Positions 20,444 through 61,049 of a DNA stretch of 64,000 nucleotides are shown here, in pieces. Numbering within the stretch: position 1 is the stretch's first letter; each line of letters opens with the position of its first letter. Where the stretch lies: positions 62,001 to 126,000 of the IMG/VR virus record IMGVR_UViG_3300046003_007892; one strand, 5' to 3'. Made by a program: the position numbers and the translations under genes. The notes under the pieces were generated by a model. That model did not search any database. It saw only the letters and a program-made list of their open reading frames with translations, and had not been told where the DNA came from.

Positions 20444-20977
20444 ATGAATATTGAACTACTCCAAGAATATATCGAGCAGGGTCTGTCCAGCTATCAGATC
20501 GCGGCCAAGACCAATAAGGCGGCGACGACCGTCCGATACTGGATAAAGAAGCACGGCCTCAGCATTTCAAAGCCTGATAAGCCGGATAACCATTGCGCCC
20601 GGTGCGACACCGTCAAGACCAGAGACGACTTCTACCAATACGACACCAAGCGGAGGACGACCTACTGTAAGCCCTGCATGGCGTCGTGGATGAAAGATCG
20701 CTGTCGGAAGCTCAAGGCCCTGGCGGTGGAATATGCGGGAGGCTGCTGCAAGGGCTGCGGCTACGACAAATATCAGGGTGCTCTAGACTTCCATCACCGG
20801 GACCCGGCGCAGAAGGATTTCTCCATTGCTGCCAACATGCGGCGCGGAGACCTCAGCGAGACCATGAAGGCCGAGATCGATAAGTGTGTTCTCCTTTGTG
20901 CTAACTGCCACCGCGAGGCTCACGGCGGACTACGGGATTGGAAGATGGAGGGCCCTGAGAGAATCGAACTCTCGTGA
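20444..20977 (+). CDS. HNH homing endonuclease with HTH and Zn-finger
   Basis: ALDFHHRDP, LLCANCHREAH; TAAATA-N6-ATG; antisense inside tRNA operon. Confidence 0.9.
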   Translation: MNIELLQEYIEQGLSSYQIAAKTNKAATTVRYWIKKHGLSISKPDKPDNHCARCDTVKTRDDFYQYDTKRRTTYCKPCMASWMKDRCRKLKALAVEYAGGCCKGCGYDKYQGALDFHHRDPAQKDFSIAANMRRGDLSETMKAEIDKCVLLCANCHREAHGGLRDWKMEGPERIELS

Positions 20978-21019
20978 AGTGATTAAAAGTCACCTATTCT
21001 GCCATTGAATTAAGGGCCC
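20946..21019 (-). tRNA. tRNA-Lys(UUU), canonical length
   Basis: loop CUUUUAA, U73, CCA. Confidence 0.9.
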
Positions 21020-21022
21020 ATC

Positions 21023-21116
21023 TGGAGAACGCGGTGGGACTCGAACCCACGGGGTCAGGCTTGCACCTGTTACGGGCTTAAAAGGCCCGGCCTCTCGCCA
21101 CTGAGGTGACGCGTCC
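21023..21116 (-). tRNA. tRNA-Lys(UUU) with long variable arm
   Basis: 94 nt; CGGGC-CUUUUAA-GCCCG; V-arm CAGGU-GCAA-GCCUG; U73, CCA. Confidence 0.8.
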
Positions 21117-21130
21117 GTTCAGAAGAAACT

Positions 21131-21217
21131 TGGAGGATTGGATGGGACTCGAACCCATGATGAGCTTACGCTAGCGGGGTAAGAACCCGCGCCTCTCGCC
21201 GCTGAGGTGACCAATCC
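21131..21217 (-). tRNA. tRNA-Lys(CUU) with long variable arm
   Basis: 87 nt; GCGGG-UUCUUAC-CCCGC; V-arm AGC-GUAA-GCU; U73, CCA. Confidence 0.8.
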
Positions 21218-21235
21218 GAGAAGTGGTGTGGGTGG

Positions 21236-21311
21236 TGGTGAACGCGCTCGGGTTCGAACCGAGGACCAACAGATTAAGAGTCTGTCGCTCTACCAACTGA
21301 GCTACGCGTCC
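21236..21311 (-). tRNA. tRNA-Lys(CUU), canonical
   Basis: loop CUCUUAA, A73, CCA. Confidence 0.93.
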
Positions 21312-50665: not shown

Positions 50666-51040
50666 TCAGCTAGAAATTTTGATTTCTACTTCTTTCGGAA
50701 AGTTGATCTCGTCTTCGTCGAAAGCCAGTCTGATTTTCGCAGCTTGTTTGTCTGAGAACGTTGCCACCGAGCCGTCAGCGTTGTAGCCGAAGTTGATCGG
50801 GAAGCACTGAATAGCCCGCAAGCGGGCTTTGACCTCTTTGAACTCAGAAGCGTTGAAAACGCCGGGGAACTCAACGATGGTGATGCCAGGACGAACGCGA
50901 GGGGAGAACTCATTCCACCCCGTCAGAACCTGGAAGGAACTCCGTGTGCGACGACGAACAGGCGCGTTCGACCGAGCGATCACGCGCTCGTGCATGCGCC
51001 GGTCAAAGCTGGCCTGCTTGCTGCTCCACGTCGATTTCAT
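50666..51040 (-). CDS. hypothetical protein
   Basis: MKSTWSS, ATGA coupling. Confidence 0.6.
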   Translation of the reverse strand: MKSTWSSKQASFDRRMHERVIARSNAPVRRRTRSSFQVLTGWNEFSPRVRPGITIVEFPGVFNASEFKEVKARLRAIQCFPINFGYNADGSVATFSDKQAAKIRLAFDEDEINFPKEVEIKISS

Positions 51041-52233
51041 TCCGTGACCTCGTTCCAACCCCAGCGGACGCCGCCCCAAAGGTGGCGCACGAGATCAACG
51101 CGAGTAGCCGAACCCAGATGCTTGGCCACGACCCGGTGTCCAACCTCGACCGGGTCTTGCCCGTCGAAGATCGAGAACATCATCGTCCTGTCGAGTCCGT
51201 CCACGTCCTTGATCGCCAGCGCGAGGTCCCGCTTGGAATATCCGGCATACTGCTCGGCGACGCGTTTGGCCAGAGCCTCCATGTAGGTCGAGATGCCTTT
51301 CTGGACCGCGTCCGCGTAATCGACCACGCGCTGACGGTCGTCTGCCGCCAGCAGGGGCAGGGTGTCGTCGATCTTGTCCTCAAGGATGAGGGCCAAGACG
51401 TTCTTCTCGCTTGAGAGGTTGTCCTTGGCGGCATGCATGATGCAATATTCGTCGGCCTTGACCTTCAGCTTGTGGCCGTTCTGGAACGCGATCACCCAGC
51501 CCTCGGTCTCGACGAGGTCGCGGGTTTCGGTGACGAAATCGTTTACGTCGTGCAGGCTCCCAGGACGTCGCTGGACAAGCTCAACGCGGTGGAAGTCGCA
51601 CAGGTCGCCAAGATACCCGAAGTCGCTGTAGACCCCCGTATCGTTGTCGCGGATGGCCAGCAAGACCAGACGGTCTACCGGGTGGTCGATGACGATGCGC
51701 TGTTGGCGCGAACACCATTCGAAGATCGGGGTTTTGTTTTCGCTCACGCATTCTCGCGCAAGCCCCTCGTAGCGGAGATTGCGTTCAACGAACCGATCAA
51801 CCTGGAGGGCAATATCGGTGAGACCCATTTTGGTCGCCCACCGCATTCCACCAGACGTCGGCAATGGAGTGATCATGCTACCGTCCATCTTTTCTAGGAT
51901 GTCACAGTTTTCGCTCCAGTCAACATTTTGTGTAAGGACTTCCGGGCGTTCGTTGAGGTTGAAGAACTTGTGGAACTTCCGGTTCACTACTTTGCCAGTC
52001 GCCTTTGAGAAAGTCAGGCCACGGCACTCGCGCAGAATCGCATACTCGCGATCTTCCTCGCGGTCGCCAGAGAACGCCGGGAAAGTTCCAGAGAAACTGA
52101 TCAGGTAGTTGAAGAGGACAAAGTCGCCACGGTCGGCTTCAATGAAGACCTGGGTGCCCAGCCGGGCGTTGTGGCGCGCAACTACTCCGCTGACCTCAGC
52201 CAGGGACATGTCATGGGGAAATTCGTAAAACAT
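51037..52233 (-). CDS. T4 Rnl1-type RNA ligase
   Basis: ECRGL, HKFFN, EKMDGS, EGWV, KVK. Confidence 0.9.
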   Translation of the reverse strand: MFYEFPHDMSLAEVSGVVARHNARLGTQVFIEADRGDFVLFNYLISFSGTFPAFSGDREEDREYAILRECRGLTFSKATGKVVNRKFHKFFNLNERPEVLTQNVDWSENCDILEKMDGSMITPLPTSGGMRWATKMGLTDIALQVDRFVERNLRYEGLARECVSENKTPIFEWCSRQQRIVIDHPVDRLVLLAIRDNDTGVYSDFGYLGDLCDFHRVELVQRRPGSLHDVNDFVTETRDLVETEGWVIAFQNGHKLKVKADEYCIMHAAKDNLSSEKNVLALILEDKIDDTLPLLAADDRQRVVDYADAVQKGISTYMEALAKRVAEQYAGYSKRDLALAIKDVDGLDRTMMFSIFDGQDPVEVGHRVVAKHLGSATRVDLVRHLWGGVRWGWNEVTE

Positions 52234-53268: not shown

Positions 53269-53877
53269 TTACAGGCTCTTGAGGGCAGCCCGGTCGGTGA
53301 TGACGTGATCGACGATGCCCCAGGCCTGCGCCTCGGTGGCGGACATGAAGTTGTCGCGGTCCATGGCGGGCTCGACGACTTCCAAGGGTTGGCCGGTGTC
53401 TTCGACGACCATCTGGTTGAGCATCGCCTTCAGCTTCTGGATTTCCTTGAACTGGATTTCGATATCCGAAGCCATGCCGCGCGCGCCGCCGCTGGGCTGG
53501 TGAATCATGACGCGAGCGTTCGGCAGGCAGTAACGCTTGCCCTTGGTTCCCGACATGAGAAGCATGGCACCCATGCTGCACGCCTGCCCGGTGCAGATCG
53601 TCTGCACGTCGTTGGAGATGAAGCGGAGGGTATCGCGGATAGCGAGGCCCGCAGTGACGACACCACCCGGCGAGTTGATGTAGAGGGCGATATCCTTCTT
53701 GGAATCTTCGCTTTCCAGGAAGAGGAGTTGGGCGACGATCAGGTTGGCCATGTGGTCTTCGACTGGGCCATTCAGGAAGATGATGCGCTCGCGCAGGAGG
53801 CGAGAGAAGATATCGAAGGACCGTTCGCCACGGCTCGATTGCTCGACGACCATGGGGACGAGGGTGTTGGATGTCAT
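53269..53877 (-). CDS. clpP: ClpP protease subunit
   Basis: [25 protein letters not shown]. Confidence 0.95.
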
Positions 53878-53894
53878 GTGGGAGGGTTCCGAAC

Positions 53895-54185
53895 TCAAAA
53901 ACTAAGGTTATCTTTCCACTGGATTTCCCCGTCGAGCATGCGAAACAGCATGAGATCGGCGACGTCTTCGAAGTAGACTACGGCTTTTCTGGAGAGTTGA
54001 ATGATTCCGAACCGTCCTGGAATATTTTTTGCCACCCATGCAACTAGCGGCCGGACATTATGATTCGAGTAATCGATTTCGAGTCGCTCCCATGAAGGCG
54101 GGAAAGGCCCGGACACCCACCGTTCCGCCAACATTTCGCGGGGGTAGACATCGAGTTCAGTAAAGTAGACCGGTTCAGGGGTCAT
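53895..54185 (-). CDS. hypothetical protein
   Basis: ends [15 protein letters not shown]. Confidence 0.65.
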
Positions 54186-54349
54186 TCGTGCTCCGTCCAT
54201 TCAACATGCCCCAACCCATTTCGGAATGCAATTTCGTTAACCCAGATTGGGTGAAAAAAATCATATTGACCCCGATCTGCCGTGAAGCTATATATGGTGC
54301 ATAGGTCTGAATTCACAGCCCTATTTGAATACACGGGTGTAAAGCACAT

Positions 54350-55909
54350 GTGGGACGTAATCCGCTAACGAAGACCTTCGACCACCAAACCGAAGAGACT
54401 TCCATCTATCAGGCCTGGGAAACCAGTGGCGCCTTCAAGCCATCAGGCAAAGGGGAACCCTATTTCCTCCCCATGCCCCCGCCGAACATCACCGGCATTC
54501 TGCATATGGGCCACGCCCTGTTTGCAACCCTTCAGGACATCAGCACGCGATTCAACCGGATGCGGGGGCGCAATACCCTCTGGCTGCCGGGGACCGATCA
54601 CGCCGGGTTGGCCACGCAAGCCAAGCTGGACGAACTCATGATCGCTCAGGGGCTCGACCCGCAGGGACCGGAGTTCGACGCGTTCGCTGCCGACTACAAG
54701 GCCAACCTGAAGAGCACCATCACGGGTCAGCTTCGCCGTTGTGGCGCGTCTGCTGACTGGTCCAGAGAGACCTTCACGCTCGACGACGATTACAGCGCAG
54801 CCGTCATCGCCGCCATGGAGAAATGCCATGAGGCCGGGATGCTCTACCAGCGGGACGGCCAGTGGTGGCTCGACATGGAACCATTGGCGGCTGAACTCCT
54901 GTCCGAGATGGACGCGGGGAGCCTGGAGATCATTCCCTCGGGCGGTGAAGGCACGCTGCGCAACTTCCTGACCAAGATCGAGCCGTGGTGCATCAGCCGT
55001 CAAATCCGCTGGGGTCATCGTTTGCCGATCTGGAAACGGAACGGCATTCGCTCCGGCATCCAGCGCATCAACGAGTTCACGATCAGCGCGACCTGTCCGG
55101 GAGACCCCCAGGATTGGACGCAGGAAGAAGGATGTCTGGATACGTGGTTCTCTTCGGCCCTCTGGCCGTTCGCCACGCTGGGTTGGCCCAAAGACACTCC
55201 CGACATGCGGACCTTCTACCCGGCCGCCATGATCGAGACCGCCGACGACATCCTGTTCTTCTGGTGCGCCCGCATGCTCATGATGGGGCTCCTCCTGACT
55301 GACCAGATGGCCTTCAAGACAATCTTCCTGCACGGTCTCATCCGGGACAAGGACGGGCGCAAGATGGCCAAGTCCATCGGCAACGGCATCGACCCCCTAG
55401 ATATCATCGAGAAGTTCGGCTGCGACGCCATGCGGTTCGCTCTGGCCGAAGATGCCACGCCGGGCCAGGACATGCGGATGTGGGATGAAAAGTTCCAAGC
55501 CGCGAAGGGACTGCGGACCAAAATCTGGAACGCATCCCGGTATGCGATCTCGCACTGGGACCGCATCGGCCACGGTCGTCTCGCATTCCCGTCCCAGCAT
55601 CCCGATGACATCGCCATCCGGGCCCGGCTAGACGAAACCATCCAGGAAATGACTGCCATGCTAGAGGGGCTTCGCTACCACGAGGCCGCCTTCACCATTC
55701 GGCAGTTCATCTTCAATGACCTGTGCGGGACCTACATCGAGCAGACCAAGTCTCGGCTCTACGATGAGAATGACATGGCGGCCAACGCGACCCTCATGGA
55801 AACCCTCCATCAGACCCTACGTCTCCTCCACCCGTTCATGCCTTACGTCACGGAGAGGATTCGGGCAGCCTACTCGCCAGACCCCTTGATCACGACCGAC
55901 TGGGTGTAG
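54350..55909 (+). CDS. valS: valyl-tRNA synthetase, minimal (no CP1 editing domain)
   Basis: PPPNITGILHMGH, WCISRQ, LDTWFSS, KMAKS; 519 aa. Confidence 0.85.
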   Translation: MGRNPLTKTFDHQTEETSIYQAWETSGAFKPSGKGEPYFLPMPPPNITGILHMGHALFATLQDISTRFNRMRGRNTLWLPGTDHAGLATQAKLDELMIAQGLDPQGPEFDAFAADYKANLKSTITGQLRRCGASADWSRETFTLDDDYSAAVIAAMEKCHEAGMLYQRDGQWWLDMEPLAAELLSEMDAGSLEIIPSGGEGTLRNFLTKIEPWCISRQIRWGHRLPIWKRNGIRSGIQRINEFTISATCPGDPQDWTQEEGCLDTWFSSALWPFATLGWPKDTPDMRTFYPAAMIETADDILFFWCARMLMMGLLLTDQMAFKTIFLHGLIRDKDGRKMAKSIGNGIDPLDIIEKFGCDAMRFALAEDATPGQDMRMWDEKFQAAKGLRTKIWNASRYAISHWDRIGHGRLAFPSQHPDDIAIRARLDETIQEMTAMLEGLRYHEAAFTIRQFIFNDLCGTYIEQTKSRLYDENDMAANATLMETLHQTLRLLHPFMPYVTERIRAAYSPDPLITTDWV

Positions 55910-56172
55910 GGCGTTTTCCGATAGGCGGCGTTCGCGGCCCGCATGGCGTCGCGGATGCCGTTCATGCGATTTTTCGCGTAGCTGATTATGGTTCCGGTGC
56001 GGGGGCTCCACACCGCGATCTTGCCGTTGGCGAATTCGAGCACGTCGAAGCGGAAATCGTCTGAGGTTCGACGCATGATGTCGGCATCCGTTTCGACCTC
56101 GCCACTAATCCTGGCGGGGCCGAAATGGTCGTGCCAGATCGGGTTGCCGTTGCCGTCGTATCTGTCTGTCAT
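55870..56172 (-). CDS. hypothetical protein
   Basis: 100 aa, coupled. Confidence 0.6.
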   Translation of the reverse strand: MTDRYDGNGNPIWHDHFGPARISGEVETDADIMRRTSDDFRFDVLEFANGKIAVWSPRTGTIISYAKNRMNGIRDAMRAANAAYRKTPYTQSVVIKGSGE

Positions 56173-56432
56173 GCAGGAATCTCGACTTCGATGAAGTGAT
56201 CTTCGGCCTGATAGGTCCCGATTTCTACATTGCCGATCACCTTGGAGCCGCAGAAATCACCGATGGTGTAGTCGGCGCCCGATACATCGTAGATCGAGAA
56301 ACACGGATACTGCCCGCCGCTGACATCGATCTTGGCAGACTTCCACGGCCCGGTGGGCTCTCGGCCGATGGCAGATCGGGCCCGGACAGTGCTGCCGTCA
56401 ACGAGTTTGGCGAAAAACACCTTATGTTTCAT
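56169..56432 (-). CDS. hypothetical protein
   Basis: 87 aa, coupled. Confidence 0.6.
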   Translation of the reverse strand: MKHKVFFAKLVDGSTVRARSAIGREPTGPWKSAKIDVSGGQYPCFSIYDVSGADYTIGDFCGSKVIGNVEIGTYQAEDHFIEVEIPA

Positions 56433-56719
56433 CGGAGATGCTCCATCACGGTCGCGAGTTCAGGGAGGATGCGGGCCTCGGCGGCATCGTTTTCGGCCCA
56501 GGTCGTCGGATAGGAAACGTATTCAGATAGGCGAATCCGCCATCCGTTTCCTGAAACATTTTTCGGTTCCACGGTGAGGCGCGGTGCGAACAGGTTTGTG
56601 AGACGAGCGGGCGGGCCGTAGCCGGACCATATGTCGTGTGCGCCCTCAAAGCGGGGGGCGTAGTGGGAACAGATGGCCTCTACAGCGGCCACCTCCTCGG
56701 GTGTGGACGGGCGTATCAT
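56429..56719 (-). CDS. hypothetical protein
   Basis: 96 aa, coupled. Confidence 0.6.
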   Translation of the reverse strand: MIRPSTPEEVAAVEAICSHYAPRFEGAHDIWSGYGPPARLTNLFAPRLTVEPKNVSGNGWRIRLSEYVSYPTTWAENDAAEARILPELATVMEHLR

Positions 56720-58068
56720 GCGCTCCTCCAGACCGTTCCCTCGGGCTTGTCTTCTAGTACGACACCCATGCTTTCGATCTTGGCCCTCAAGCGGTCAGCC
56801 TCGGCCCAGTCCTTATTGGCCCGCGCCGAGTTGCGTTCTTGAATGAGTTCCCAAATGTCGAACATCGGCCGGGTGTCGGTCTTGCGTTGACGCCAGCGGG
56901 TCGGGTCGGACTCCAACAAGCCCATCATGTTGGCCGACCGGAGAAGCTTATCGACGCTCTCTTCGCCGCGCGAAACCCGACTGGCCAGATCGTGCAGGGC
57001 CGCCAGTGCACCGGGGGTGTTGAGATCGTCCTGAAGGGCCCCCAGAACGGATTCATCGACGTCCGGGGGTCCGGCGACCTTTCCGTTCAGAACAGCCGTG
57101 TAGAGGCCGTTCAGAGCCTTCTCCGCCTCTTCCATGCGGGCTTCGGTATAGTCGATGGCCGCTCTATAGTGGGTGGAGAGCAGGAAGTAGCGCACGACCT
57201 CGCCGTCGAGATCGCTTTTCATGAGTTCAGCCAAGGTGACGAAGTTGCCCTGGCTCTTCGACATCTTCTTGCCGTCTACGGTCAGCATGCCGTTGTGGAG
57301 CCAGTAGTTGGCCAGCGGCTCACCGTGCGCGCATTCCGACTGCGCGATCTCGTTCTCGTGGTGGGGGAATATGAGATCGGAGCCGCCGCCGTGAATGTCG
57401 ATGGTCGGGCCGAATATGCGGGCGATCATGGCCGAGCATTCGATATGCCAGCCCGGACGTCCCATTCCCCACGGCGAGGTCCAGACAGGCTCACCCGGTT
57501 CCTTGCCGGGTTTCCACAAGACGAAGTCGGCGGGGTCGCGCTTGTATGAGCCGGGCTCGACGCGGGCCCCGGCTTGGAGGCCGAGAAGGTTTTGTTTGGA
57601 GAGCTTGCCGTGTTGGGCGTGGCTCTTCACCGAGAAGAGAACGTGCCCATCCGCCACGTAGGCGTGACCCTTGTCGATCAGCGTGGTGATCATCTCGATC
57701 ATGACGCCGATATGCGTGGTCGCTCGGGGGTTCAAAGTTGGGTCGAGGTTCCCCAGCATCCGCATCACCGAATGGTAGACCTGGATGGTCTCATTGGTGA
57801 GTTCACTGATGCTGATGTTGCGCTCTTTTGCGCGCTCGATGATCTTGTCGTCGATGTCCGTGTAGTTGCGCGCGAAGAAGACGCTGTCCTCCCCATAGGT
57901 GTGGCGAAGGAGACGGAACAGGATATCGAACGCGGCGGCGGGGCGACCATTTCCCAGGTGGGGGTGGTCATAAACCGTGGGGCCGCACTGGTACACGGTC
58001 ACCCGGTTGGGGTGCAGGGGAGTGAACTCGCGTTTCTCTCCCGTCATCGTGTCGTGCAGCTTGATCAT
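56716..58068 (-). CDS. cysS: cysteinyl-tRNA synthetase
   Basis: YQCGPTVY, HLGN, GRPGWHIECS, FPHHENE, KMSKS, anticodon-binding helix. Confidence 0.95.
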   Translation of the reverse strand: MIKLHDTMTGEKREFTPLHPNRVTVYQCGPTVYDHPHLGNGRPAAAFDILFRLLRHTYGEDSVFFARNYTDIDDKIIERAKERNISISELTNETIQVYHSVMRMLGNLDPTLNPRATTHIGVMIEMITTLIDKGHAYVADGHVLFSVKSHAQHGKLSKQNLLGLQAGARVEPGSYKRDPADFVLWKPGKEPGEPVWTSPWGMGRPGWHIECSAMIARIFGPTIDIHGGGSDLIFPHHENEIAQSECAHGEPLANYWLHNGMLTVDGKKMSKSQGNFVTLAELMKSDLDGEVVRYFLLSTHYRAAIDYTEARMEEAEKALNGLYTAVLNGKVAGPPDVDESVLGALQDDLNTPGALAALHDLASRVSRGEESVDKLLRSANMMGLLESDPTRWRQRKTDTRPMFDIWELIQERNSARANKDWAEADRLRAKIESMGVVLEDKPEGTVWRSA

Positions 58069-58248
58069 CTGATCTCCAAAATACGGGTGGCCCCGGACAA
58101 CTCGACCACCCGCCGCATACTTTAATACACCCGTTGCCGCGTTGCCGCGCAGCATCCCGACCCAGCATTGAGCCGAAGACCCGGCGACGGGGCTCATTTT
58201 CACGTCCCCGTACCTTCCCACTATCATGGGAACTATTTTTTGCAAAGC

Positions 58249-58283
58249 AAAAGGGCCGGACTGGTTTCCCAATCCGACCCTTT
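58249..58283 (-). terminator. intrinsic terminator
   Basis: GGGTCGGATTGG-GAAA-CCAGTCCGGCCC-TTTT. Confidence 0.8.
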
Positions 58284-58305
58284 CTTTACGAAGAGATCGC
58301 CCCTC

Positions 58306-59589
58306 TTACTTGGTTTTCTCTTCGTAATAGCAGGTGAGGCCGAACGGAGCCTCGATGCCTTGCGTTGCCGCGTGTCCGTGGATGACGAACAGGGTATCGA
58401 CGTAGTTCTCGTCGCCGGGCGGGCACCAGTGACCGCAGGGATAGCCGTCCGTGAAGAAGACCATCCGTTCGGGCTCGATGCCCTCCTTCTTCATGAACTC
58501 CCAGTTGCACTCGAACATGGTGCCGCCGCGACCCTGCATGGGGTACTCGTCGATCTCGTCCAGGTTGGCGCCCGTGAACTCCTTCAGACCGTAGGTCTGG
58601 GTGTCGAAGGTCCAGACGAGCAGCTTGAAGTCCCGGAAGGTCTCCATGATGCCCTTGATCTCCGACAGGATGTCACGGAGCATTTCCTCGCTCATCGACC
58701 CCGAGGTGTCGATCACGCAGGCGATGTCGATGGTGTCCATGTAGTTCTGGCCGGGCAGCATGAACTGCGGGCGGCCAACCTTGCCGGTCTTCTCGTCGAG
58801 AATGCCGGTGGCCCACGTCCGACGCGACGGACGTTCGAAGGTGTAGTCGTCCTTCATGGTCGAGCGGAAGTGCGCGTCCAGAAGGGTGCGCCAGTCCAGC
58901 TTGGGCTCGACCAGTTCGTCGATCATCTGACGAACGGCGGCCGGAACGTTGCCCGCACCGGCACCCTGCGCGGCCTGAATGGTCGCCGCACGGACTTCGT
59001 TGCGGATGTTCTGGAGGTCGCGCTCGGTCAGAGACGGCGGGCCGTTCTTGCCGATCACGTTGACGTCGGTGCCGCCTTGGCCGCCACCTTCGCCGTCGCC
59101 GTCCTCGTCGGCCTCGCCGTCGAAGTCGAGGTGCTCGTCCATCGACATCTTCATCGGCGTGTTGTTCTGCTGGAGCATGTCGTAGATTTCGTAGGCGGAC
59201 AGTTCGTCCGTATACGTTTGCTCGTGCAGAATGTTCTCGGACGGCGGAACGCCAACCTTCTCCTGGATGAGGATGTAGTTGACGCTGTAGTCGATGGCCA
59301 TGCCCCACAGTTGCTTGTCGCGGTGACCGCGACGTCCCAGGTGGTCGAGGACGCAGTGCAGGACTTCGTGACCCAGAACGAACAGGAGTTCGGGCAGGCT
59401 CAGGCTCTTGATGAAATCGCGGTTGTAGTAGAGACGGCGACCATCGGTAGTGATCGAGCGGCACCAGTCGGTGGCGTCAACCAGCGTCAGGCGCGTAGCC
59501 AGATTCCCGAAGAACGGCTTCGAGAACAGGAGCTTCACGCGAGCAGCGGTGATCGCTTGAACTACCGGGTCTGAAAGATCGTATGACAT
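58306..59589 (-). CDS. metallopeptidase plus vWA domain protein (MoxR partner)
   Basis: HEVLH; IDTSGSMS; FTDG. Confidence 0.85.
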   Translation of the reverse strand: MSYDLSDPVVQAITAARVKLLFSKPFFGNLATRLTLVDATDWCRSITTDGRRLYYNRDFIKSLSLPELLFVLGHEVLHCVLDHLGRRGHRDKQLWGMAIDYSVNYILIQEKVGVPPSENILHEQTYTDELSAYEIYDMLQQNNTPMKMSMDEHLDFDGEADEDGDGEGGGQGGTDVNVIGKNGPPSLTERDLQNIRNEVRAATIQAAQGAGAGNVPAAVRQMIDELVEPKLDWRTLLDAHFRSTMKDDYTFERPSRRTWATGILDEKTGKVGRPQFMLPGQNYMDTIDIACVIDTSGSMSEEMLRDILSEIKGIMETFRDFKLLVWTFDTQTYGLKEFTGANLDEIDEYPMQGRGGTMFECNWEFMKKEGIEPERMVFFTDGYPCGHWCPPGDENYVDTLFVIHGHAATQGIEAPFGLTCYYEEKTK

Positions 59590-59648
59590 TGGACCTCGGG
59601 AAAGGGAGAAAATAGTGGGGGCGGATTCTTAGGCCCGCCCCCTGCGGA

Positions 59649-61049
59649 TTACGAGACGATCAGTCCCTTGAACTTGTCGGCGAAGGCGTCGAACGTCTTC
59701 ATCCGGCTCGTGTCGAAGGGCAGGCGGTGGACCGACAGCGCGGCCTTGGCGCCCATGATGGCGATCTCGGCCTGGAAGTTGTCCATGATGAAGGCCAGGA
59801 AGTTGTCGGCCGAGGCCAGCCACTTCGTGTACTCCTCCTTGGCCGACTCCGCCTTCTTGAAGTTCTCGCCGTGGTGACGCTTGATGTCCTCGATCTGGTC
59901 CTTCAGGCGGTAGCAGAGCGTGGTGGTCAGGGCGTAGGCCAGTTGGACCTCGACCTTTTCCATCTTCTTCAGCTTGCCGGAGAGGATTTGATCGGCGTCC
60001 GGCAGCTTGGACGCGATCTTGCGGAACTCGTTGAACTGGACGCCCGAGCCGTCGCCGACGCAGCCGATGACCAGAGCGGTCAGGATGAACTCGCCCGCCG
60101 TGGGGTTGTTCTCCAGGATTTCGGACACGAAGGTCCACGAGCGCGGGGTCTGGAAGCCACGGGCCGCCGAACCGGGGTCGAACTTGTGGAGTTGGTCCTT
60201 GAAGGCCGAGATGTAGCCGACGACTTCCGGGTGCACCATGGCGCCCAGAGCCCAGGTAATCCACTCGTCGGCGTCGGACTGGAGTTCGACGTGAACGAAG
60301 CGGTTGGCGATGGGGGTCGGCATCTTGAAGGTGACGCCCTTGTCGGTGTCCCGGTTGCCCATGGCGAGCATCAGGACGTCCTTCGGCACCTCGTATTCGC
60401 CCTGACGGCGGTCGAGGATAAGCTGGTAGGCGGCGGCCTGCACGGACGGCGGAGCGGAGTTGAACTCCTCGAAGCCCAGAACGGCCTTGGTCAGACCGGT
60501 GACGCGGTAGCGGACCTGACCGGCGACCGGGGCGCCGCTGGCGTCCTTCAGGATGACCGTGAAGCGGTCCTGAGCGACGGCGACCGACGAATCCGAGGCC
60601 TCGCCGCGAACGACGGTGACGATCTCGGCGGTGTGTTCGGGGTTGATCGCATCGACCGTGATCTTCGGGTCGGTGCAGTAGGCGATGCCGTTGATGCCGG
60701 TCGGGTTGTAGAACCGGACGTTGCGCTCACAGGCGTCGATTTCGATGACGTTGTCTTCGTCGAGGTTGCGCGGCAGGACCAGCGGGGCTGACCAGCGGAC
60801 GCCGTTGACTGAGCCTTCGACGACCGGATACGGGATGCCGCGCAGATCGGTCGGGTCCATCTGGGACAGGCGGACGTCGATGAAGGCGCGGCCCATTGAG
60901 GTGGCGACTTGCTGCGAAATCTGGGACTTCGCGATACCGGGGGGACCCCAGATGAAGGTGGAGAGTTGCGTGTTGGACATCGCAGCCAGAGCCAGAACAA
61001 GCTCTGACGGCTTCAGGACCATCACGGTGGGGTTGTCTTTCTTCGCCAT
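59649..61049 (-). CDS. MoxR-family AAA+ ATPase with internal insert
   Basis: GPPGIAKS, DVRLSQ..DLRG, EEFN, GNR, NRF. Confidence 0.85.
   Translation of the reverse strand: MAKKDNPTVMVLKPSELVLALAAMSNTQLSTFIWGPPGIAKSQISQQVATSMGRAFIDVRLSQMDPTDLRGIPYPVVEGSVNGVRWSAPLVLPRNLDEDNVIEIDACERNVRFYNPTGINGIAYCTDPKITVDAINPEHTAEIVTVVRGEASDSSVAVAQDRFTVILKDASGAPVAGQVRYRVTGLTKAVLGFEEFNSAPPSVQAAAYQLILDRRQGEYEVPKDVLMLAMGNRDTDKGVTFKMPTPIANRFVHVELQSDADEWITWALGAMVHPEVVGYISAFKDQLHKFDPGSAARGFQTPRSWTFVSEILENNPTAGEFILTALVIGCVGDGSGVQFNEFRKIASKLPDADQILSGKLKKMEKVEVQLAYALTTTLCYRLKDQIEDIKRHHGENFKKAESAKEEYTKWLASADNFLAFIMDNFQAEIAIMGAKAALSVHRLPFDTSRMKTFDAFADKFKGLIVS

What the first reader, a model, noticed from the sequence alone, without database searches (positions are those of the whole stretch)
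54350..55909. Minimal ValRS with clean deletion of the CP1 editing domain
Seen: GMLYQRDG joins directly to QWWLDM, where cellular ValRS has the CP1 editing insert of about 200 aa (recalled architecture). The C-terminal coiled coil is also missing, but HIGH, KMSKS-like and anticodon helix remain. Established: CP1 removes mischarged Thr. Inference: a low-fidelity or altered-specificity enzyme, possibly charging unusual phage tRNAs.
Basis: partly seen in the sequence, partly recalled or inferred. Interest (0 to 1): 0.6.

Follow-up and report, generated by a model that had tools for sequence, protein, structure and literature searches.

The report
Huge-phage valyl-tRNA synthetase without proofreading domain
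A lake-water huge phage carries a stripped-down valine-charging enzyme that has cleanly lost its proofreading domain and its tRNA-elbow-binding tail, and it belongs to a conserved family of over 100 such phage enzymes that I could not find described in the literature.

Summary
Residues 1-169 align to T. thermophilus ValRS 3-170, and Q171 onward aligns to residue 358 onward. About 187 residues (the Zn knuckle and the whole CP1 editing domain) are replaced by a D-G turn, and about 157 C-terminal residues (stem-contact domain and coiled coil) are absent.

HIGH (HMGH), KMSKS (KMAKS), the seven valine-pocket residues and the anticodon-reading helix are all kept. AlphaFold2 gives pLDDT 94.7 with a closed beta-hairpin at the CP1 site (TM 0.90 to 1GAX).

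The gene is one of 104 clusters (90% identity) with the same junction. They form one clade, evolve under purifying selection (dN/dS about 0.15) and lie mostly on 240-580 kb phage contigs, plus the cultured Stenotrophomonas jumbo phages RAS14 and CM1.

Three complete genomes hold no separate CP1, C-terminal piece or YbaK/ProX deacylase. Two of them keep a full-length IleRS, and this phage's CysRS, AspRS and SerRS are full length.

Most likely it is an active, editing-free ValRS that charges phage and host tRNA-Val during infection. Altered amino-acid specificity is not supported. No biochemistry exists. I rate it a new variant of a known kind.

The parts
54350..55909 (+). Gene for the minimal ValRS (519 aa, GTG start, TGA stop). 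It is a lone + strand gene inside a block of - strand genes.
   Evidence: the same call by another pipeline; a GTG start is conserved in 10 of 10 family genes read from DNA
54201..54349 (.). Intergenic stretch of about 150 nt upstream of the gene, divergent from the - strand genes. The 55-aa ORF listed here is not called by other pipelines. By eye there is TTGACC-N17-TATATA at about 54265-54293, but the rule-based scan finds no promoter.
54476..54514 (+). PPPNITGxLHMGH: valine-pocket residues P43, P44 and N46 (Tth P41, P42, N44) and the HIGH motif HMGH (52-55).
   Evidence: invariant wherever the residue is present in the gene call
54842..54871 (+). Site of the missing CP1. Strands 165-168 and 171-174 are joined by the D169-G170 turn, which replaces Tth ValRS residues 171-357 (Zn knuckle plus editing domain).
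   Evidence: bridged by independent contigs
55028..55138 (+). Residual insert (residues 227-263) at the position of the second Zn-binding insert of full-length ValRS. It has no Cys cluster here and is shortened to 6-8 residues in many family members.
55145..55264 (+). DTW...DILFFW segment with pocket residues W266, I301 and W305 (Tth W456, I491, W495) and D300. It also holds the family-specific changes D299 and C306.
55361..55375 (+). KMSKS loop, here KMAKS (338-342). Both lysines are invariant in the family.
55484..55867 (+). Helix-bundle anticodon-binding domain (about residues 379-506), with K391, N394, R397 and Y398 matching Tth K581, N584, R587 and F588. The protein ends 13 residues later, where full-length ValRS continues for about 160-170 residues.
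56716..58227 (-). Neighbouring full-length CysRS (context, not part of the ValRS). It scores over the equivalog cut-off and is called as 503 aa by another pipeline.

Best explanation
The gene encodes a working but minimal valyl-tRNA synthetase of a huge, lake-water phage. It has a Rossmann catalytic core, the stem-contact fold and the helix-bundle anticodon reader, and nothing else. It most likely activates valine in an unchanged valine pocket, recognises tRNA-Val through A35/C36 with the retained helix bundle, and charges the phage's own tRNA-Val(UAC, GAC) and probably the host's. This would keep Val-tRNA supply up during a long infection as part of a phage translation module (24 tRNAs and at least 4 synthetases in the 240-kb fragment). 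CP1 is replaced by a two-residue turn and no phage trans-editor is present, so the enzyme cannot hydrolyse Thr- or aminobutyryl-tRNA-Val itself. Fidelity then rests on the synthetic site alone, or on the host's ValRS acting in trans. The loss happened once, in the ancestor of a large phage family, and has been kept under purifying selection. Shown here: the architecture, residue conservation, monophyly, selection, absence of trans pieces and co-occurrence with tRNA-Val. Inferred: activity, substrates and the drop in fidelity.
For: - ValRS is the best family by far: 546 bits against 227 for IleRS. 1GAX is the best sequence match (E 1.5e-108) and the best fold match (TMq 0.90).
- The AF2 model has pLDDT 94.7 and pTM 0.93, with a closed hairpin at 165-174.
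- P43, P44, N46, D83, W266, I301, W305, D300, K338, K341 and K391 are invariant in 104 short sequences.
- All 104 share the 5-residue junction and lack the C-terminus. They form one side of a branch with SH-aLRT 100.
- dN/dS is 0.13-0.17 in the least saturated pairs.
- There is no separate ValRS CP1 or C-terminal piece in the complete genomes RAS14, G002 and G003, and no PF04073 deacylase in them or in G000.
- tRNA-Val genes are present in G000 (2), RAS14 (1) and G002 (5). Both G000 tRNA-Val have A35, C36, A73 and CCA.
- The other synthetases are full length: CysRS, AspRS and SerRS in G000, and IleRS with CP1 in G002 and G003.
- Precedent: the naturally CP1-less M. mobile LeuRS is active, and its short linker can replace CP1 in E. 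coli LeuRS (PMC3643597). Its structure 3ZIU is a top fold match.
Against: - No biochemical or expression data exist, and no RNA run holds the sequence.
- The protein scores below the NCBIfam ValRS equivalog cut-offs: 546 against 704, and 516 against 612.
- As I recall from Fukai et al. (2000, 2003; not re-read here), the missing C-terminal coiled coil contacts the tRNA elbow in the T. thermophilus complex and its deletion lowers charging. Activity on tRNA may therefore be weak or need a partner.
- Thirteen family-specific substitutions, some near the active site (D299, C306), have unknown effect.
- The query has KMAKS rather than KMSKS.
- The own record is only about 45% complete, so a trans factor in the unseen half cannot be excluded for this phage itself.
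Confidence: 0.7

Rival explanations
1. The enzyme is active, but translation in the infected cell stays accurate. Mischarged Thr-tRNA-Val is cleared in trans by the host's full-length ValRS (CP1) or another host deacylase, so the domain loss is simple streamlining with no cost in fidelity.
For: A bacterial assembly that carries a family member (Sphingomonas sp. 3-13AW) also has a canonical ValRS scoring 985 bits. Free-standing ProXp-ST1/ST2 deacylases that hydrolyse Thr-tRNA-Val exist in bacteria (PMC11295145).
Against: No PF04073 gene was found in that Sphingomonas assembly or in any of the four phage records. EF-Tu capture competes with re-binding (general knowledge). The two complete relatives G002 and G003 keep CP1 in their own IleRS, so streamlining is not general.
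Confidence: 0.2
2. The protein has a job outside ribosomal translation. It could supply an aminoacyl-tRNA for a tRNA-dependent transferase (such as DNA or cell-wall modification), or act as a tRNA-Val-binding decoy or regulator.
For: Phage enzymes that use charged tRNA for DNA hypermodification are known (Mom with Gly-tRNA, PMC13219725). Many synthetase paralogues have non-translational roles (PMC9437257).
Against: Both catalytic motifs and the anticodon reader are conserved, which a decoy would not need. No conserved partner gene lies next to it, and synteny differs between relatives. It co-occurs with full tRNA sets and other normal synthetases.
Confidence: 0.08
3. Amino-acid specificity has shifted to threonine, aminobutyrate or another near-cognate, and that is why editing was discarded.
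For: Thirteen positions are fixed differently from full-length ValRS, including D299 (Y in ValRS) and C306 (V) beside pocket residues I301 and W305.
Against: All seven residues that form the valine pocket in 1GAX, as I recall them (their numbering fits the alignment), are invariant. The anticodon helix still fits A35/C36. The phage tRNA-Val genes are canonical in their identity elements.
Confidence: 0.06
4. It is a decaying gene remnant or an assembly or annotation artefact.
For: It scores below the equivalog cut-offs. Many database entries of the family look N-terminally truncated.
Against: The frame is open with the same junction in 104 clusters, and dN/dS is about 0.15. Independent contigs bridge the junction, and the gene is present in cultured phage genomes. 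The apparent N-terminal truncations are mis-called starts: tblastn finds residues 1-41, and the genes start with GTG.
Confidence: 0.02

Closest known systems
Bacterial valyl-tRNA synthetase (T. thermophilus ValRS, PDB 1GAX; NCBIfam TIGR00422 / NF004349)
   Same: It shares the catalytic Rossmann fold with HIGH and KMSKS, the identical valine pocket, the stem-contact fold and the helix-bundle anticodon domain. Identity to bacterial ValRS over the shared parts is about 43%, and TMq is 0.90.
   Different: It lacks residues equivalent to 1GAX 171-357 (Zn knuckle plus CP1 editing domain) and about 706-862 (stem-contact extension and coiled coil). It has lost the Cys clusters of both Zn sites. It scores below the equivalog cut-offs. 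It is phage-borne and additional to the host enzyme.
Mycoplasma mobile LeuRS (PDB 3ZIU), the known natural class Ia synthetase without CP1
   Same: The CP1 editing domain is replaced by a short linker in an otherwise intact class Ia core. It is among the top fold matches (TMq 0.79, TMt 0.71). It is documented as active and error-prone (Li et al. 2011 as cited in PMC3643597).
   Different: It has a different amino-acid family (Leu, not Val; 17% identity) and a nonapeptide linker rather than a two-residue turn. It keeps a C-terminal tRNA-binding domain. It is the sole LeuRS of a reduced cellular genome, whereas this enzyme is an accessory copy in a virus and part of a family of more than 100 clusters.
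Synthetases of huge phages (Al-Shayeb et al. 2020, PMC7162821)
   Same: Huge phages carry up to 15 tRNA synthetases and many tRNAs. The authors proposed that these charge phage tRNA variants and redirect translation. This phage fits that picture: 24 tRNAs and at least 4 synthetases in 240 kb.
   Different: That paper's main text, searched for 'tRNA synthetases', 'synthetase' and 'editing', does not mention domain loss. Here the ValRS alone is minimised, while CysRS, AspRS and SerRS, and IleRS in relatives, are full length.
MetRS minimal core (e.g. S. aureus MetRS, 7WPN)
   Same: It has a similar size (about 500 aa) and domain plan: a Rossmann core plus helix bundle, with no editing domain. TMt is 0.81.
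   Different: The sequence family and pocket are ValRS, not MetRS (63 bits against 321 in Pfam). MetRS never had a CP1 editing domain, whereas this lineage lost one.

Membership tests
Valyl-tRNA synthetase (class Ia) | HIGH and KMSKS signature motifs in a Rossmann fold | tested here: met
   HMGH is at 52-55 and KMAKS at 338-342. Both lysines and both histidines are invariant in the family. The fold is confirmed.
Valyl-tRNA synthetase (class Ia) | Valine-binding pocket residues (Tth P41, P42, N44, D81, W456, I491, W495) | tested here: met
   P43, P44, N46, D83, W266, I301 and W305 align to them and are invariant in the 104 short sequences. The list of pocket residues is recalled from Fukai et al. 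2000. The numbering was checked against the 1GAX alignment.
Valyl-tRNA synthetase (class Ia) | Helix-bundle anticodon-binding domain that reads A35/C36 | tested here: met
   Pfam Anticodon_1 matches at E 1.6e-20. K391, N394, R397 and Y398 align to Tth K581, N584, R587 and F588. Binding itself was not tested.
Valyl-tRNA synthetase (class Ia) | CP1 editing domain inserted in the Rossmann fold | tested here: not met
   There are 5 residues where full-length enzymes have 187-191. PF13603 is absent from all short members. The model shows a closed hairpin.
Valyl-tRNA synthetase (class Ia) | C-terminal stem-contact extension and coiled coil (PF10458) | tested here: not met
   The protein ends at the position of 1GAX ~705 of 862. 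There are 0-20 residues after W518 against 164-172 in full-length enzymes. PF10458 is found only in the full-length hits.
Valyl-tRNA synthetase (class Ia) | Score over the curated equivalog cut-off (NCBIfam) | tested here: not met
   NF004349 gives 546 bits against 704, and TIGR00422 gives 516 against 612. ValRS is still the best family by more than 300 bits over IleRS.
Valyl-tRNA synthetase (class Ia) | Charges tRNA-Val with valine | not testable with these tools
   This needs ATP-PPi exchange and aminoacylation assays.
Naturally CP1-less class Ia synthetases (M. mobile LeuRS type) | Editing domain replaced by a short peptide while the synthetic core is intact | tested here: met
   A D-G turn replaces about 187 residues. 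3ZIU is a top fold match.
Naturally CP1-less class Ia synthetases (M. mobile LeuRS type) | Orthology to that LeuRS lineage, and being the only synthetase of its kind in a reduced cellular genome | tested here: not met
   It belongs to the ValRS family, with 17% identity to 3ZIU. It is virus-encoded, and a bacterial assembly that carries a relative also has a canonical ValRS.
Synthetase-like paralogues without a tRNA function (e.g. MshC-type ligases) | Loss of the anticodon-binding domain or of tRNA-contact motifs | tested here: not met
   The anticodon domain and KMSKS are retained and conserved.

The most novel reading that the evidence does not exclude
The phage family discarded ValRS proofreading and the elbow-binding tail on purpose. 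One possibility is a private, insulated ValRS/tRNA-Val pair that keeps working when the host ValRS or tRNA-Val is shut off or attacked, for example by a defence or by the phage itself. Another is a controlled level of Val-to-Thr mistranslation in the infected cell. Either way, over 100 natural variants of a roughly 450-520-aa editing-free ValRS would be a ready-made minimal scaffold, and a natural experiment on how much fidelity a virus needs.
Probability: 0.15. Interest if true: 0.8.

Novelty: new variant of a known kind. Interest (0 to 1): 0.6.

Why it matters
ValRS is the textbook case of the 'double sieve', and its CP1 domain is treated as a near-universal part of the enzyme. The only well-studied natural class Ia enzyme without CP1 is the LeuRS of Mycoplasma mobile.

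This finding is a whole clade of viral ValRS that lost CP1, both Zn modules and the C-terminal tRNA-binding tail in one ancestral event and has kept the remainder under purifying selection. Related phages keep the editing domain in their IleRS.

If the enzymes are active, three things follow:
- They define the minimal ValRS.
- They let one ask whether phages tolerate or exploit Val-to-Thr errors.
- They allow direct tests in cultured systems (Stenotrophomonas phages RAS14 and CM1).

There is also an annotation lesson. Family members are often mis-started because of a conserved GTG start, and they fall below the equivalog cut-offs, so pipelines label them only as 'class I tRNA ligase family protein'.

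Tried and rejected
- **CP1 or C-terminal domain encoded separately.** A valS profile scan of the own 240-kb record and of three complete genomes (RAS14 at 320 kb, G002 at 578 kb, G003 at 543 kb) found only the two core stretches plus other class I enzymes.
- **Phage YbaK/ProX-type trans-editor.** PF04073 was not found in any of the four phage records, nor in the Sphingomonas assembly.
- **Assembly artefact.** Rejected by independent contigs bridging the junction and by 104 clusters with the same junction.
- **N-terminally truncated family members.** These are mis-called starts. tblastn recovers residues 1-41, and 10 of 10 genes start with GTG.
- **P0099 and P0107 (CP1 present, C-terminus absent) as evolutionary intermediates.** They group with full-length Chloroflexi-like ValRS, not next to the short clade.
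- **TAG recoding suggested by a CUA-anticodon tRNA.** ORF statistics give no signal.
- **Sigma-70 promoter upstream.** The rule-based scan finds none. A by-eye TTGACC-N17-TATATA is only a lead.
- **Expression evidence.** No RNA run holds the sequence.
- **Literature.** Nine full-text searches found no paper describing a CP1-less phage or cellular ValRS. The library does not hold subscription-only papers.
- **Look-ups that failed.** P0054 is not on record by exact sequence. The 1.27-Mb record of P0081 is not held for whole-record search.
- **Nature of the 581-kb Sphingomonas contig.** It is ORFan-rich near the gene, but a virion-protein query did not hit it, so it is left unresolved.
- **The large representative search.** Not run, on the operators' advice, because the family was already clear.

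Full report
**1. The observation**

The ORF at window:54350-55909(+) is real. It has a GTG start and encodes 519 aa. Another pipeline calls the identical product on two further contigs.

Pfam finds tRNA-synt_1 (E 1.4e-95, in two stretches) and Anticodon_1. Among NCBIfam models ValRS is best by far, at 546 bits against 227 for IleRS. It matches in two stretches and stays below the curated cut-off of 704.

Against T. thermophilus ValRS (1GAX, 862 aa), query 6-169 aligns to chain 3-170, and query Q171 aligns to chain Q358. The alignment runs on to about chain 694. So about 187 residues are replaced by D169-G170, and the last ~157 residues of 1GAX have no counterpart. The missing internal block holds the CxxC...CxxC zinc knuckle and the whole CP1 editing domain.

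A 10-sequence alignment shows this residue by residue. In a 120-sequence alignment the query has 5 residues where full-length ValRS has 187-191, and 1 residue where they have 164-172 at the C-terminus.

The junction is not an assembly error. Contigs from other lake-water studies cover nt 53900-55175 and 54749-54907 without a difference.

**2. What is kept**

HMGH (52-55) and KMAKS (338-342) are present. Using the 1GAX alignment, the residues I recall as forming the valine pocket (Fukai et al. 2000: P41, P42, N44, D81, W456, I491, W495) correspond to P43, P44, N46, D83, W266, I301 and W305. The anticodon-reading helix (K581, N584, R587, F588) corresponds to K391, N394, R397 and Y398.

In the 104 short homologues these catalytic and pocket positions are invariant wherever the gene call includes them. 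The helix positions vary only conservatively: N/Q/S, R/K and F/Y.

AlphaFold2 with the family alignment gives pLDDT 94.7 and pTM 0.93. Strands 165-168 and 171-174 form a closed hairpin exactly where CP1 would leave and re-enter the Rossmann fold.

Foldseek puts 1GAX first (TMq 0.90). The naturally CP1-less LeuRS of Mycoplasma mobile (3ZIU; TMq 0.79, TMt 0.71) and minimal MetRS cores (TMt up to 0.81) follow.

The second Zn-binding insert has no cysteine cluster here, and many relatives shrink it to 6-8 residues.

**3. It is a family, not a one-off**

The word-index search returned 104 clusters (90% identity) of 411-567-aa proteins with the same junction. Full-length bacterial ValRS appear only from about 43% identity downward.

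Many members sit on contigs of 240-580 kb. IMG/VR holds nine relatives, including records of 578 kb (direct terminal repeats, 100% complete) and 543 kb (100% complete). The cultured Stenotrophomonas jumbo phages RAS14 and CM1 carry one, annotated simply as 'valyl-tRNA synthetase'.

On a quick maximum-likelihood tree (460 columns) the short forms are one side of a branch with SH-aLRT 100. This is compatible with a single loss event. Two proteins that keep CP1 but lack the C-terminus (P0099, P0107) group with full-length enzymes and are not intermediates.

Codon comparisons of ten family genes give dN/dS of 0.13-0.17 in the least saturated pairs (dS 0.8-1.0). That is purifying selection.

The turn residues are turn-formers throughout: D/G at 169 and G/D/N at 170. 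Thirteen positions are fixed differently from full-length ValRS, among them D299 and C306 beside the pocket.

Many database entries seem to start at M42 or M53. This is a gene-calling artefact. tblastn finds residues 1-41 upstream, paired cluster members differ only in their start, and all ten genes read from DNA begin with GTG.

**4. Context**

The window is bases 62001-126000 of a 240,363-bp IMG/VR virus record that CheckV estimates as 45% complete. Nearly identical DNA occurs in lake-water metagenomes of at least five studies.

The window is ORFan-rich with a few virion-protein hits. It shares virion, ClpP, RNA-ligase, DUF2201 and ATPase genes with the 578-kb and 543-kb phages.

The record carries 24 tRNA genes, among them tRNA-Val(UAC) and tRNA-Val(GAC). 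Both have A35, C36, A73 and an encoded CCA, and the GAC species has an unusual T-loop. RAS14 has 29 tRNAs with one tRNA-Val. The 578-kb relative has 69 tRNAs with five tRNA-Val.

The other synthetases in the record pass their equivalog cut-offs at full length: CysRS (474 bits), AspRS (740 bits) and SerRS (419 bits). The two complete relatives encode a full-length IleRS (657 and 739 bits, one stretch over profile positions ~30-850, so CP1 is included). The minimisation is therefore specific to ValRS and is not general genome streamlining.

**5. Is editing supplied in trans?**

A valS profile scan of the own record and of three complete genomes finds no separate CP1 or C-terminal piece.

A 2024 review notes that free-standing ProXp-ST1/ST2 deacylases hydrolyse Thr-tRNA-Val and that ProXp-x clears aminobutyryl-tRNAs (PMC11295145). 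The corresponding Pfam family (PF04073) is absent from all four phage records. It was also not found in the Sphingomonas sp. 3-13AW assembly. That assembly carries a family member on a 581-kb ORFan-rich contig and a canonical ValRS (985 bits) on another contig.

The only evident trans-editor is thus the host's own ValRS.

**6. Most likely mechanism (confidence about 0.7)**

It is most likely an active, editing-free ValRS. Valine is activated in an unchanged pocket, and tRNA-Val is held through its anticodon by the helix bundle. The 3' end is charged without any later hydrolytic check.

According to the same review, ValRS CP1 normally removes Thr and aminobutyrate. Without it, accuracy depends on the synthetic site alone.

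By my recollection of the classical measurements (Fersht), this discrimination is a few hundred-fold. That would mean roughly one error per thousand Val codons, which a lytic virus could plausibly tolerate. This number is recalled, not computed here.

The natural precedent is M. mobile LeuRS. It lacks CP1 and charges tRNA, and its short linker can replace CP1 in E. coli LeuRS (PMC3643597).

The weakest point is the lost coiled coil, which contacts the tRNA elbow in 1GAX (recalled). The enzyme may be slower, may rely on the 13 family-specific residues, or may prefer phage tRNAs.

The rivals are set out in their own section:
- accuracy rescued in trans by the host;
- a role outside translation;
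- shifted amino-acid specificity, which is contradicted by the invariant pocket;
- a pseudogene or artefact, which is essentially excluded.

**7. Comparison and novelty**

By descent and by its catalytic features it is a ValRS. It fails three membership features of the canonical family: CP1, the C-terminal domain and the equivalog cut-off. It works like the M. mobile LeuRS type of editing-free class Ia enzyme but is not related to it beyond the class.

Al-Shayeb et al. 2020 reported synthetases in huge phages in general. In that paper's main text, searched for 'tRNA synthetases', 'synthetase' and 'editing', I found no mention of domain loss (PMC7162821). Nine full-text searches found no description of a CP1-less ValRS, and that library is incomplete.

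I rate it a new variant of a known kind, with interest 0.6.

Noticed in passing
window 20946-21311 (-) and 51037-52233 (-): There are four tRNA-Lys genes in a row (two UUU, two CUU), and two of them are unusually long (94 and 87 nt). The same window holds a T4-type RNA ligase (Pfam RNA_lig_T4_1). Together they look like a possible answer to anticodon nucleases that cut tRNA-Lys.
   Followed up: no
G000:C1:139655-139730 (outside the window; window = G000 62001-126000): This is a tRNA with a CUA anticodon (amber-suppressor type). RAS14 carries CUA and UUA suppressor-type tRNAs, and the 578-kb relative carries two CUA. ORF-length statistics give no sign of TAG recoding in this record.
   Followed up: partly
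G000:C1:141056-141146 and 141497-143596 (outside the window): A 91-nt tRNA-Cys with a long variable arm lies next to a full-length AspRS. A long tRNA-Asn (89 nt) lies at G000:C1:40741-40829.
   Followed up: no
G000:C1:42533-42607 (outside the window): The phage tRNA-Val(GAC) has the T-loop UGCGAAA, with G where U55 is expected. This may be relevant to an enzyme that lacks the elbow-binding coiled coil.
   Followed up: no
window 53269-59589, compared with G002:C1:76204-81873: In the complete 578-kb relative, RNA ligase, ClpP, DUF2201 peptidase and ATPase are contiguous, and ValRS and CysRS lie about 70-100 kb away. In the window a ~4.4-kb block sits between ClpP and DUF2201: ValRS on +, three small ORFs, and CysRS on -. 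The synthetase genes therefore move within these genomes.
   Followed up: partly
window 54350 and L008-L017 match starts: All ten family genes read from DNA start with GTG. Gene callers often choose a downstream ATG (M42 or M53), which gives database entries that lack part of the HIGH region.
   Followed up: yes
G002:C1:358257-359234: The homologue of the virion protein window:43077-44033 in the 578-kb relative is reported with five in-frame TGA codons. This could mean TGA read-through or recoding in that phage's late genes, or a broken gene.
   Followed up: no
L005 (contig JBAJGS010024343.1, 1,273,734 bp): A family member (P0081) lies on a 1.27-Mb metagenome contig in a neighbourhood almost free of Pfam hits. 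Two other members are on contigs over 1 Mb. What these elements are is unknown.
   Followed up: no
window 58306-61049 (-): A DUF2201 putative metallopeptidase with a VWA-like domain lies next to a MoxR-like ATPase (phrog_1297). The pair is conserved in the 578-kb relative.
   Followed up: no
L008 (Sphingomonas sp. 3-13AW, contig NZ_JASNVZ010000001.1, 581,572 bp): A cultured-isolate assembly holds a short ValRS on an ORFan-rich 581-kb contig, in addition to its canonical ValRS. The contig may be a huge phage or a megaplasmid, and it hints at sphingomonads as hosts for part of the family.
   Followed up: partly
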